Source: Magallana gigas
Lineage: Eukaryota
NCBI RefSeq assembly: GCF_963853765.1
Contig: NC_088858.1
Location: forward strand, 35,526,001 to 35,590,000
Direction: 5' to 3'
Length of the DNA: 64,000 nt
Below are positions 56,526-58,577 of this stretch, piece after piece. Under the pieces are notes generated by a model that was given only the letters and a program-made list of their open reading frames with translations, searched no databases and was not told where the DNA came from. The translations under genes were made by a program, and so were the position numbers. Position 1 is the stretch's first letter, and each line of letters opens with the position of its first letter.

Positions 56526-58577
56526 ATGGATGATAGTTGCCGTGTGTCTGAGGTTCTGTACGTGGGTCTGTGTGATAATGTAGGGACACCAACAGAAGTG
56601 GCCGTCAGGAGGGAGATAATGGACATGGCAGAGATGATAAAGAAACCTGCACAGATACATCGATGTTACAGAGAGATGGAGAGTGGTAGTCATAGGGAAG
56701 GTTTTAGATTTAAATCATCTGATAGAGACATTATGCTCTGGTCTACCAATCATAAAGTGATAACTGACATATCACAGTCCAGTGTTTACGATCTATCAAA
56801 ACATACCATTATTCTCATGGAGGATACTGATACGCCGCCGGGGTTTGTCAGACTACAGCTGCTGACATCACAAGATGGAGATATTGAATCGTCAGTTATT
56901 CAATTCAGTGACGGTATGTACATATCAAATTTAAAGTGGAGACAAATAATGCTGACGACGATGGTGGAAAATAATTCTTATAGCGACACAAAAAGCCATG
57001 GTCCCTGTGCTAGCGGTGTCAGTTGCTATGTAGAAGTTGACGTTGCTGGGTGTTTTCATTGCTCTTATTGGTCACGCTTAACCTGTTATTGGAGAAAAAG
57101 ATGTACTCTGCATAACTGGCCTCCAAACCACGTGTTTGATGATATACTAAGGAATGGTTGTCATTTTGTGTCCGTCGGAAGTAAAATGGCAGCCGCTGAA
57201 AATGAGCTGGAATGGAGAATGTCATTTTCTCAGGCAGAACAAAAACTTGTCTATTCATTGAATCATACACAATTTTTGTGCTATGGCCTTTTAAAAATAT
57301 TTCTAAAGGAAATCGTCAATCGCGACATTAAAGAACCATTTTTGTGTTCATATTTTATGAAGACAACGATGTTCTGGTTGGTACAAATAGGAAATATTTC
57401 ATGGTGCCCAAATAACTTACTGGATTGTTTCTGGAAATGTTTCAAATATCTGATACATTGCGTCCATCGAGGTGTGTTGCCAAATTTTTTTATTCCACAA
57501 AACAACATGTTTGCAAGCAAATTAGCCACAGTTAGTGGTGTACGCGCACGAGAGTGTCTGTTAAAACAACTGAACTGCTATTCTGAAATGGGCGTGACCT
57601 GTTTGCTACAAAGTCCGACGGTCAGAAAAATGATGGTTGAACCAGTTTTACGTAACAGCCTTGTCAGAATAGAGCCACTTCTGAGATATACCAAGAGTTC
57701 TGCTCATATAGACGTTTGTATCAATAATGAATTAGATAAGACAAGTTTTCAACAAACAGACATACATGACAGTTATTTTATGTTGAGGAACATAATAATT
57801 TTGTCAAACCAATCACTTACAGTATATGAGGCGTTAACATTTCAGAAATGCACTGCTGATGTTTTAGTCGAAGCAGCATTTAAGTACCTCAATAATTCAA
57901 CAAAAAGTGCAAATAAGAAAATCTACATAACAAACAGATTGATTGGTAACTTGTTGAAGCTGGCAGGTAGAGTGGGTGATGTGTCTTGTCTGTTCTATCT
58001 TGCTCTGTATTACTACAGAATATCTAGATATAGAGAGGCGCTTCATGTTGCAGCTCGGGTTAAATCAAGAATCTCACAGCCCTATATCATGTATAGCACA
58101 GTGGACCAAGAAAGTTACAATGAATGTGTGGCTGGTTGGTCTCTGTCTAAACGTATGAGGAAGGCTTGGTTAAATCACGTATGGCTTCATAGTGAGGTTT
58201 ATTATATACAGGAGCTGGATTTAGAACGGAGAGTAAGCCAAGAAAACGGCACAATTATCTCGCATGTTTCACCCTTCGTGGTGACAGAAATGTTGAGTGT
58301 GTTCTGCAACTACAGACTAGGTAACCGGTCCCAGTGTCTACAGTCACTGACAGACCTACAGACACTGCTGCTCTATGATGACGGGAGATACGTACCTTTA
58401 TATAGCAGAGACCTCTCGTGGCAGATACTGGGGATCTGTCAGCACGTTGTGGGGGACCTACACGGGGCGTTACAGTCTTATCAACAATCACTGAGTCAGA
58501 TACCATTCCACAAAATACAGAATGCCACAAAATACAGAATAGCCTTCATTCTTAATCGATTCAGTGAAAGAAAATAG
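56526..58577 (+). CDS. cGAS-like receptor (cGLR; Mab-21 nucleotidyltransferase domain plus C-terminal TPR-like helices), 683 aa, intronless CDS
   Basis: NTase signature G54-S55...D66-R-D68 and a third acid, D172 (EVDVA). Mab-21 motifs WPP...GCHFV, LEWRMSFSQAEQKL, GLLKIFLK, SYFMKTTMFW and LPNFFIPQNNMF are present. TPR-like segments include LALYYYRISRYREAL and WQILGICQHVVGDLHGALQSYQQSL. Confidence 0.92.
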   Translation: MDDSCRVSEVLYVGLCDNVGTPTEVAVRREIMDMAEMIKKPAQIHRCYREMESGSHREGFRFKSSDRDIMLWSTNHKVITDISQSSVYDLSKHTIILMEDTDTPPGFVRLQLLTSQDGDIESSVIQFSDGMYISNLKWRQIMLTTMVENNSYSDTKSHGPCASGVSCYVEVDVAGCFHCSYWSRLTCYWRKRCTLHNWPPNHVFDDILRNGCHFVSVGSKMAAAENELEWRMSFSQAEQKLVYSLNHTQFLCYGLLKIFLKEIVNRDIKEPFLCSYFMKTTMFWLVQIGNISWCPNNLLDCFWKCFKYLIHCVHRGVLPNFFIPQNNMFASKLATVSGVRARECLLKQLNCYSEMGVTCLLQSPTVRKMMVEPVLRNSLVRIEPLLRYTKSSAHIDVCINNELDKTSFQQTDIHDSYFMLRNIIILSNQSLTVYEALTFQKCTADVLVEAAFKYLNNSTKSANKKIYITNRLIGNLLKLAGRVGDVSCLFYLALYYYRISRYREALHVAARVKSRISQPYIMYSTVDQESYNECVAGWSLSKRMRKAWLNHVWLHSEVYYIQELDLERRVSQENGTIISHVSPFVVTEMLSVFCNYRLGNRSQCLQSLTDLQTLLLYDDGRYVPLYSRDLSWQILGICQHVVGDLHGALQSYQQSLSQIPFHKIQNATKYRIAFILNRFSERK

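What the first reader, a model, noticed from the sequence alone, without database searches (positions are those of the whole stretch)
56526..58577. Intact-looking cGAS-like receptor fused to a TPR-like C-terminal module
Seen in sequence: the GS motif and the three acidic metal-binding positions (D66, D68, D172) are all retained, and there is no Zn-ribbon-like insertion that I can recognise. About 330 aa of helical, TPR-like sequence follows the Mab-21 domain. Established: animal cGLRs are expanded in bivalves, and some make cyclic dinucleotides for STING signalling on sensing nucleic acid. Inference: this copy could be an active enzyme whose TPR tail sets ligand specificity. Its activating ligand and product cannot be read from the sequence. 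The intronless CDS sits in a repeat-dense, gene-poor stretch, as expected for a recently duplicated immune paralog.
Basis: partly seen in the sequence, partly recalled or inferred. Interest (0 to 1): 0.7.

Follow-up and report, generated by a model that had tools for sequence, protein, structure and literature searches.

The report
Oyster cGAS-like enzyme with TPR-like tail
This is an intact, weakly transcribed copy of a very large Pacific oyster gene family of cGAS-like immune enzymes that all carry the same helical TPR-like tail, so it is an ordinary member of an already described kind, not a new fusion or a recent duplicate.

Summary
There is no cGAS-type zinc thumb, and a 348-aa helical tail follows the Mab-21 domain.

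The AlphaFold2 model is confident (pLDDT 92.9). Its first ~370 residues match cGAS and oyster Cv-cGLR1. The tail is TPR-like at the level of fold class only.

The tail is not a special fusion. The host genome (Magallana gigas) gave at least 499 first-look candidates, and 65 were scored. Nearly all are intronless and match the query end to end. Relatives occur in other oysters, a pearl oyster, scallop and mussels. The active-site motif is almost invariant in 122 members.

Li et al. 2023 already list TPR-fused cGLRs, and their screening panel included a member of this family (#99).

"Recently duplicated" is not supported. The nearest paralog is 73% identical (dS about 0.35-0.45). The copy has a syntenic C. 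angulata ortholog, and that ortholog is frameshifted twice.

Transcript-like contigs tile only 56409-58822, so expression looks low.

Ligand and product remain unknown.

The scan had noted the same architecture elsewhere in this genome.

The parts
56244..56305 (+). 62-bp duplicate of the gene's own coding sequence (copy of 57206-57267), lying upstream of the promoter. Meaning unknown.
   Evidence: 61/62 identical. Also present in the C. angulata locus. Absent upstream of the paralogs.
56383..56390 (+). TATA-like box (TATAAATA), about 26 nt before the first base of the transcript-like contig.
   Evidence: Sequence read. X1 contig starts at 56409. The 56395-56440 stretch is conserved upstream of several paralogs. 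Inferred promoter, not shown.
56409..56525 (+). Putative unspliced 5' UTR.
   Evidence: X1 contig record 1 covers 56409-56831 without gaps. Contig ends cannot prove a transcription start.
56526..58577 (+). Complete intronless CDS, 683 aa (79 kDa, pI 8.55).
   Evidence: It deviates at only 4 of 133 family-conserved positions, which equals the family median.
56526..57530 (+). Mab-21 / cGAS-like nucleotidyltransferase domain (aa 1-335): NTase core plus helix bundle.
   Evidence: Pfam PF03281 and PF20266. Foldseek to cGAS and Cv-cGLR1: E about 1e-10 to 1e-11, TM by target 0.64-0.71. Profile hits to cGLR1 at 6e-20 and cGAS at 1e-18.
56685..56729 (+). Catalytic motif: G54-S55, 10 residues, then D66-x-D68.
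   Evidence: Nearly invariant in 122 family members: G 119, S 119, D66 121, D68 119. In the model it lies at the strand 48-53 / helix 55-58 turn and the start of strand 67-73.
57039..57041 (+). D172, the third catalytic acid.
   Evidence: D in 120 of 122 members. The family profile aligns this D with D319 in the human cGAS stretch I-S-V-D-I-T-L. It lies in strand 169-179.
57531..58574 (+). C-terminal helical, TPR-like module (aa 336-683, pI 9.18).
   Evidence: Separate model: pLDDT 89.8. VIA-align Z 9-12.7, all to TPR proteins. Foldseek PDB gave only E>5e-3. AFDB clusters: the same module sits behind Mab-21_C in oyster, scallop and mussel proteins.
57666..57965 (+). Most variable stretch of the tail (aa 381-480).
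   Evidence: Column entropy 2.1-3.0 bits against a family mean of 1.6-1.9. dN/dS 0.54-0.83 against the seven nearest paralogs tested (dS below 0.5). Differences from the C. angulata ortholog cluster at CDS nt 1200-1800.
58266..58505 (+). Highly conserved C-terminal block of the tail (aa 581-660).
   Evidence: Entropy about 1.2 bits, as low as the catalytic core. RNA reads from paralogs pile up here (bin 58334-58530).
58578..58850 (+). Putative 3' UTR, with AATAAA at 58830-58835. An A13 tract follows at 58861-58873.
   Evidence: Sequence read. X1 contig ends at 58822. Homology to paralog L018 runs to about 58790.

Best explanation
The ORF encodes a standard member of a bivalve-expanded subfamily of cGAS-like receptors (Mab-21 nucleotidyltransferases). 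In this subfamily a ~350-aa TPR-like helical module is a built-in C-terminal half of the protein.

Most likely mechanism (inferred):
- The Mab-21 half is a ligand-gated nucleotidyltransferase.
- It uses the G54-S55 / D66 / D68 / D172 site to make a cyclic di- or oligonucleotide from NTPs.
- One of the oyster's several STING proteins reads that product.
- The tail is a regulatory or recognition module. It has a fast-evolving part (aa 381-480) that could give each paralog its own trigger, and an invariant end (aa 581-660) that could serve a function common to all paralogs.

What is shown: intact ORF, fold, conserved catalytic residues, family-wide architecture, purifying selection on the Mab-21 half, transcript-like coverage, and STING genes in the genome.

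What is inferred: catalysis, the kind of product, STING as the receiver, and any role of the tail in sensing.

This copy is a lone, old, dispersed paralog on chromosome-scale contig C6. It is not a recent duplicate.
For: Intact ORF with the exact catalytic residues.

Mab-21 and Mab-21_C pass Pfam thresholds.

The model has pLDDT 92.9 and pTM 0.90. It matches cGAS and Cv-cGLR1 with probability 1.00 and TM by target 0.64-0.71.

D172 aligns with human cGAS D319.

Full-length structural matches go to two active, biochemically characterised cGLRs of about the same length: Sp-cGLR2 (E 1e-16) and Cv-cGLR2 (TM 0.51/0.54).

The motif is nearly invariant in 122 members at 40-74% identity.

dN/dS of the Mab-21 half is 0.22-0.37 against paralogs and 0.05 against the C. 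angulata ortholog.

The copy is as close to the family consensus as a typical member.

At least 499 candidates are in the genome. Of the 65 scored, 52 have no stop, and nearly all cover aa 1-680.

The tail profile finds 687 clusters at 50% identity. In the full-length ones the tail sits at about 335-680.

Contigs of two small, transcriptome-sized runs tile only 56409-58822. PolyA reads lie with the first mate on the minus strand, as expected for a + strand RNA in most stranded libraries.

STING ligand-binding domains map to about 7 loci.

Li et al. 2023 count 168 cGLRs and 6 STINGs in C. gigas and list TPR fusions.
Against: No member of this exact subfamily has a demonstrated product. The family member in the Li et al. 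panel (#99, XP_022289921.1) was screened with poly I:C and dsDNA and is not among the 15 enzymes followed up.

The literal published motif is not matched on two points. S53 stands where the motif has Q or T, and 101 residues separate the acidic motifs where the motif allows 50-90.

The Mab-21 half is not basic (pI 6.6), unlike the nucleic-acid-sensing cGLRs (pI above 8.5).

The C. angulata ortholog carries a 14-bp and a 1-bp deletion that shift the frame of the Mab-21 domain. The gene is therefore dispensable in at least one close lineage, unless these are assembly errors.

Most polyA reads laid here are 95-99% matches that fit only in part, so they come from paralogs. Locus-specific expression is low.

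No identical protein model is on record.

I could not measure the distances between the three acids, because model coordinates are not exposed by the tools.
Confidence: 0.6

Rival explanations
1. The ORF is intact but the gene is redundant and drifting towards loss. It would be one dispensable copy among hundreds, kept open by chance or only in some haplotypes.
For: The syntenic C. angulata ortholog is frameshifted at codons 61-65 and at codon 320, and is annotated only as a 379-aa C-terminal protein. The tail shows dN/dS 0.73 against that ortholog (30.5 nonsynonymous, 11.5 synonymous changes). Locus-specific RNA is low. No identical protein is on record. 13 of the 65 scored paralogs carry stops.
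Against: The window copy deviates at only 4 of 133 conserved positions, the family median. Its Mab-21 half differs from the C. angulata copy by 1 nonsynonymous and 5 synonymous changes. The open frame has persisted over dS about 0.35-0.45 since the split from the nearest paralog, with overall dN/dS about 0.4-0.5. Transcript-like contigs exist in two laid runs, and 14 such runs hold part of the sequence. The 1-bp deletion in C. angulata lies in a T7 run and may be an assembly error.
Confidence: 0.2
2. It is an active nucleotidyltransferase with an output other than a STING-directed cyclic dinucleotide. Examples would be linear 2'-5' oligomers as in OAS, a cyclic trinucleotide, or nucleotidylation of a protein held by the tail.
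For: The Pol-beta-type triad fixes the chemistry of phosphoryl transfer, not the product. Cv-cGLR2 (cGLR-03), one of the two full-length structural matches, makes a product that matched no known standard. TPR-like modules usually bind peptides or proteins (fold-class hits; the usual role is general knowledge).
Against: All animal cGLRs characterised in Li et al. 2023 make cyclic dinucleotides. The oyster has about 7 STING loci. One lies about 80 kb from the nearest paralog, at the edge of the C8 array.
Confidence: 0.12
3. It is a non-enzymatic Mab-21 scaffold, as MAB21L1/2 and MiD51 are thought to be. The nucleotide pocket would bind a cofactor and the tail would recruit partners.
For: Weaker sequence hits go to MB21D2 (5e-12), MAB21L1 (2.5e-6) and MiD51 (2e-4). 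MAB21L1/2 models match at TM by hit 0.60-0.65. No activity has been published for this subfamily.
Against: All catalytic residues are kept almost without exception across 122 diverged members, which is hard to explain without catalysis. Li et al. describe Mab21L1/2/3 as lacking a predicted functional active site, unlike this family. The best profile hits are cGLR1 and cGAS.
Confidence: 0.05

Closest known systems
Bivalve cGLRs with a C-terminal TPR-like module (Li et al. 2023, bioRxiv 10.1101/2023.02.22.529553; panel entry #99, XP_022289921.1, Crassostrea virginica)
   Same: Same family at sequence level. Panel entry #99 shows the same motifs in the same order: S-G-S-H-R-E-G-F, an S/T-D-x-D-x-M acidic motif, the W-R-x-S-F-S-x-A-E-Q-K-L helix, and P-N-F-F-I-P-Q-N-N-M-F before the tail. 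The architecture 'cGLR + TPR' is listed in their Figures 1C and S2A.
   Different: This is another species and paralog. The best full-length public protein hit is 74% identical. Entry #99 is not among the 15 enzymes followed up, so neither protein has a known product or ligand.
Cv-cGLR2 (cGLR-03; UniProt A0A8B8EY61) and Sp-cGLR2 (UniProt A0A2B4RNI3)
   Same: Both give whole-length predicted-structure matches (query 1-659 and 28-681) with a Mab-21 domain plus a long helical C-terminal half. Both are active enzymes whose activating ligand is unknown.
   Different: Only 15-16% identity. The Sp-cGLR2 match has rmsd 29.5, so the domains are arranged differently. The Cv-cGLR2 motifs read differently (A-G-S ... 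S-D-I-D-F-M). Sp-cGLR2 is predicted to have a highly negatively charged ligand-binding surface. This protein has pI 8.55.
Vertebrate cGAS and oyster Cv-cGLR1 (PDB 8gjw)
   Same: Same fold over about 370 residues, same catalytic triad, and the same helix-bundle motifs.
   Different: No zinc thumb. No long N-terminal extension, since G54 lies close to the start. The Mab-21 half is neutral to acidic (pI 6.6). There is an extra 348-aa tail.
TPR proteins (kinesin light chain, BtubC, PlcR/Rap, LGN/Pins)
   Same: The tail (aa ~406-683) superposes on TPR solenoids with Z 9-12.7, 175-217 aligned residues and rmsd 3.5-6.9.
   Different: Pfam TPR models score below threshold (19.4 bits against a cut-off of 27). 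Foldseek E-values are above 5e-3. The tool's own note says Z below about 13 in helical repeats may mean only a common arrangement. Two small beta-hairpins interrupt the repeats.

Membership tests
cGLR (criteria of Li et al. 2023) | Catalytic residues: GS, then [DE]h[DE]h, then a third acid h[DE]h | tested here: met
   G54-S55, D66-R-D68-I and V-D172-V. Nearly invariant in 122 members. D172 aligns with human cGAS D319.
cGLR (criteria of Li et al. 2023) | Literal motif h[QT]GS [X8-20] ... [X50-90] h[DE]h | tested here: not met
   S53 replaces Q/T, and 101 residues (aa 70-170) separate the two acidic motifs. The authors' own panel member #99 has the same S-G-S, so the pattern was evidently not applied to the letter.
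cGLR (criteria of Li et al. 2023) | Homology across both the NTase core and the C-terminal helix bundle | tested here: met
   PF03281 at 36.2 bits and PF20266 at 51 bits, both above the 24.1-bit cut-off. The Pfam NTase hit covers only profile positions 121-195. The N-terminal part is supported by the fold match.
cGLR (criteria of Li et al. 2023) | Predicted structural homology to cGAS / CD-NTases | tested here: met
   Foldseek PDB: cGAS and Cv-cGLR1, E 3e-11 to 4e-10, probability 1.00, TM by target 0.64-0.71. AFDB Swiss-Prot: cGLRs and cGAS.
cGLR (functional definition) | [quoted passage not shown] | not testable with these tools
   Needs biochemistry. A family member was screened by Li et al. 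and not followed up.
cGAS proper | Zinc-thumb insertion between the NTase core and the helix bundle | tested here: not met
   The query and the family profile have a gap opposite the Cys-rich stretch of mouse and human cGAS.
TPR repeat family (Pfam clan) | Sequence match to TPR models above the gathering score | tested here: not met
   TPR_2 scores 19.4 bits against 27, and TPR_1 scores 15.8 against 27.8. A few relatives do carry a precomputed PF07719 hit.
TPR repeat family (fold) | Antiparallel helix-pair solenoid that superposes on solved TPR domains | tested here: inconclusive
   All top VIA-align hits are TPR proteins, at Z 9-12.7. That range is not decisive for helical repeats, and Foldseek gave E>5e-3.
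MAB21L1/2-type (non-catalytic Mab-21) | No functional active site | tested here: not met
   The triad is complete and conserved. Li et al. describe Mab21L1/2/3 as lacking a predicted functional active site.

The most novel reading that the evidence does not exclude
The TPR-like tail is the true sensor of this subfamily. Its hypervariable stretch (aa 381-480, with 541-580) would recognise non-nucleic-acid ligands that differ between paralogs. The invariant last ~80 residues would couple binding to the Mab-21 active site. Oysters would then hold an NLR-like repertoire of hundreds of second-messenger synthases feeding a handful of STINGs, one of which lies about 80 kb from the nearest paralog, at the edge of its array on C8. 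This lone C6 copy would be one receptor of that repertoire, lost in C. angulata.
Probability: 0.25. Interest if true: 0.6.

Novelty: new member of a known kind. Interest (0 to 1): 0.27.

Why it matters
Animal cGLRs are a recently recognised class of innate immune receptors, and most have no known ligand or product. Bivalves hold by far the largest repertoires.

This work shows that the TPR-like tail belongs to an entire, strongly conserved oyster subfamily. That subfamily has an intact active site, a fast-evolving tail segment and an invariant tail end. This gives a concrete target for biochemistry: full-length protein against tail-less protein, and swaps of the variable segment between paralogs.

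This particular locus adds little beyond a correct annotation. It is one old, dispersed, weakly expressed copy. Its ortholog is broken in the sister taxon, so it would be a poor first choice for such experiments compared with well-expressed members of the arrays on C8 and C10.

Tried and rejected
Transposon-borne gene: rejected.
- Paralogs share only about 150 bp upstream and about 200 bp downstream of the ORF.
- No inverted repeats flank the gene.
- The copies are 41-73% identical, not a recent burst.

Recent tandem duplicate: rejected. It is a lone copy on C6, while the main arrays are on C8, C10, C9, C2 and the far end of C6. dS to the nearest paralogs is 0.35-0.45.

Nested in the WDPCP gene: rejected. 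The Fritz-domain exons lie at window 31446-39696 on the minus strand, about 17 kb away.

A specific solved homolog for the tail: none found. Foldseek PDB gave nothing at E<=1e-3, and VIA-align gave only generic TPR matches.

Looking for this protein or its nearest paralogs by accession in the Li et al. tables found nothing. The stored tables are cut. A motif search then found panel entry #99.

An exact-sequence look-up found no called gene with this product. Records of the window's own genome may be left out of that tool, so this says little.

PolyA raw reads (X21, X22) were mostly cross-mapping from paralogs: 77 of 81 and 178 of 201 reads were only 95-99% alike, and about 79% ran on into unlike sequence. 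They cannot give an expression level for this locus.

Convergence is inferred from the secondary-structure positions and the alignment to cGAS.

No later paper in the library characterises the bivalve tail.
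Full report
**Observation**

Window 56526-58577 (+) is a single open frame of 683 codons. It runs from an ATG to a TAG, and an in-frame stop lies 24 nt upstream. At about 36% GC the stop-codon frequency is about 0.07 per codon. An open frame of this length by chance has a probability of about 4e-22 (my arithmetic).

Pfam finds Mab-21_C (1.7e-13) and Mab-21 (8e-9) above their thresholds, and TPR models only below theirs. 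Sequence search of solved structures finds cGAS (about 1e-8), cGLR1, MB21D2 and MiD51. In those alignments the query has a gap where cGAS carries its Cys-rich zinc thumb.

**Structure**

I built an alignment of 99 family members. With it, AlphaFold2 gives mean pLDDT 92.9 and pTM 0.90.
- G54-S55 sits at the turn after strand 48-53.
- D66 and D68 sit at the start of strand 67-73.
- D172 sits in strand 169-179. This is the layout of a Pol-beta-type nucleotidyltransferase.
- Foldseek matches residues ~1-370 to human, mouse and pig cGAS and to oyster Cv-cGLR1 (8gjw), with probability 1.00 and TM by target 0.64-0.71.
- A family profile aligns the D172 strand with the human cGAS stretch that holds D319.
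- The human cGAS motif printed in Li et al. Table S3 (T-G-S, 11 residues, E-F-D-V-M) compares directly with S-G-S, 10 residues, D-R-D-I-M here.

I could not measure distances between the acids because coordinates are not exposed. Convergence on one site is therefore inferred, not shown.

**The tail**

A separate model of aa 336-683 has pLDDT 89.8.
- Foldseek against the PDB gives only weak TPR hits, at E>5e-3.
- The exhaustive VIA-align search gives Z 9-12.7, all to TPR proteins (BtubC, kinesin light chain, PlcR, Rap, LGN). These cover residues ~71-348 of the tail.
- By the tool's own calibration this shows a TPR-like fold class and not a specific relative.

In AlphaFold DB clusters, the best matches to the tail are oyster, scallop and mussel proteins. 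Several of them are named as Mab-21_C-containing, with the module behind that domain. The tail profile finds 687 clusters at 50% identity. In the full-length ones the tail always sits at about 335-680. Named examples include Saccostrea and the pearl oyster Pinctada. Many ~350-aa hits begin ten residues before the profile start. That position is the conserved M328, so they are probably truncated gene calls and not tail-only genes.

**Family and genome**

Three paralog ORFs are 100% identical to NCBI Magallana gigas proteins, so the genome is M. gigas.
- The query finds at least 499 first-look candidates. Of the 65 scored, nearly all match aa 1-680 in one frame, and 52 have no stop.
- They lie in arrays on C10 (21.5-22.6 Mb), C8 (43.2-44.0 Mb), C9 (30.3-30.8 Mb), C6 (54.7-56.2 Mb) and C2 (60.2-60.8 Mb).
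- The window copy, at C6 35.58 Mb, is alone.
- Its best paralog is 73% identical, with dS 0.35-0.45 and dN/dS 0.4-0.5. 'Recently duplicated' is therefore not supported.
- The motif columns are almost invariant in 122 members. The window copy departs from family-conserved residues at 4 of 133 positions, which is the family median.
- Variation concentrates at aa 121-180, 381-480 and 541-580. Residues 241-260 and 581-660 are the most conserved.
- dN/dS is 0.22-0.37 for the Mab-21 half and 0.40-0.84 for the tail.

**Ortholog**

A 9.2-kb stretch around the gene is 96% identical to C. angulata chromosome CM046778.1.
- There the gene has a 14-bp deletion at codons 61-65, just before D66. It also has a 1-bp deletion at codon 320, in a T7 run.
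- The Mab-21 half is thus out of frame, and only the last 379 aa are annotated (P0047).
- Against this ortholog the Mab-21 half shows 1 nonsynonymous and 5 synonymous changes. The tail shows 30.5 and 11.5. The changes cluster at CDS nt 1200-1800.

**Expression**

Fourteen small, transcriptome-sized runs hold about 40% of the sampled words.
- I laid two of them. Their contigs tile 56409-58822 and leave the single-copy flanks uncovered.
- A TATA-like box lies at 56383 and AATAAA at 58830. This fits an unspliced mRNA of about 2.4 kb.
- The runs are only guessed to be RNA, and contig ends prove no transcript ends.
- Two polyA raw-read runs gave few reads. Most came from paralogs and piled up on the conserved aa 603-668 block. 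The first mate lay on the minus strand, as expected for a + strand RNA in most stranded libraries.
- Expression is therefore likely but low.

**What is known**

Li et al. 2023 curated about 3,000 animal cGLRs.
- They report 168 cGLRs and 6 STINGs in C. gigas, and they list TPR fusions among the architectures.
- Their 140-protein panel includes XP_022289921.1 (#99), which is plainly of this family.
- It was screened with poly I:C and dsDNA and is not among the 15 enzymes followed up.
- Whole-length structural matches of my model are Sp-cGLR2 and Cv-cGLR2. Sp-cGLR2 makes 2'3'-cGAMP and has an unknown ligand. Cv-cGLR2 is cGLR-03, with an unknown ligand and an unmatched product.
- The genome holds STING ligand-binding domains at about 7 loci.
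- No later paper in the library deals with the tail.

**Verdict**

The gene is a sound, intact member of a published kind of protein.
- The tail is not a novel fusion, and the copy is not young.
- The most likely function is ligand-gated synthesis of a cyclic nucleotide signal, with the tail as a built-in regulatory or recognition module. That remains inference.
- The main rival is that this particular copy is dispensable and on its way out.
- Two earlier notes of this scan describe the same architecture elsewhere in this genome.

Noticed in passing
window 56244-56305 (copy of 57206-57267): A 62-bp piece of the gene's own coding sequence (aa 228-248, the E-W-R-M-S-F-S-Q-A-E-Q-K-L helix) is repeated 962 bp upstream, just before the putative promoter, with 61 of 62 bases identical. 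The C. angulata locus also has it. No paralog locus does. Origin unexplained.
   Followed up: partly
window 56377-58790, with an A13 tract at 58861-58873: Homology to the nearest relatives (L026 and L018, on C8 near 44.0 Mb) starts at the TATA box and ends just before the polyA signal. A genomic A13 run follows. The duplicated unit is transcript-sized, so this lone copy may be an old retroposed copy. I found no clear target-site duplication.
   Followed up: partly
G000:C8:43868398-43871396, against paralog L002 at C8:43949444: A STING gene (three exon-like hits to the STING ligand-binding domain) lies about 80 kb from this gene's nearest paralog, at the edge of its C8 array (43.95-44.03 Mb). 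This may be linkage of sensor and receiver, or it may be chance.
   Followed up: no
L031 5104-7140 (C. angulata CM046778.1): The two deletions in the C. angulata ortholog (14 bp and 1 bp) add up to 15 bp, so the frame is restored after codon 320. The annotated product is the C-terminal 379 aa only. The 1-bp deletion lies in a T7 run and could be an assembly error.
   Followed up: partly
window 58266-58505, compared with the paralogs: dS in the conserved tail end (aa 581-660) is only 0.13-0.24 against the seven nearest paralogs tested, where the whole gene shows 0.35-0.45. This hints at gene conversion or a constraint at nucleotide level.
   Followed up: no
window 60578-61911: A 1.34-kb interspersed repeat with at least 4601 first-look candidates in the genome, 88-94% identical, built of ~160-bp internal subrepeats. 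A ~300-bp repeat at 55234-55578 has at least 752 candidates.
   Followed up: partly
window 17609-19225 (+), 14714-15463 (-), 31446-39696 (-), 36278-37948 (+): Other content of the window: an intronless BTB-BACK-Kelch ORF (538 aa), an FHA-domain ORF, the WDPCP/Fritz exons, and a 556-aa ORF with no Pfam hit that lies inside the WDPCP span.
   Followed up: partly
window 57451: Reads and contigs of three runs (X21, X1 and X2) leave the window sequence at 57451 with the same 30-nt continuation. It encodes the same peptide (Y-H-C-V-H-R-G-V-L) without the L-I of the window's Y-L-I-H-C. This is probably an allele or a close paralog with a 2-codon difference.
   Followed up: no
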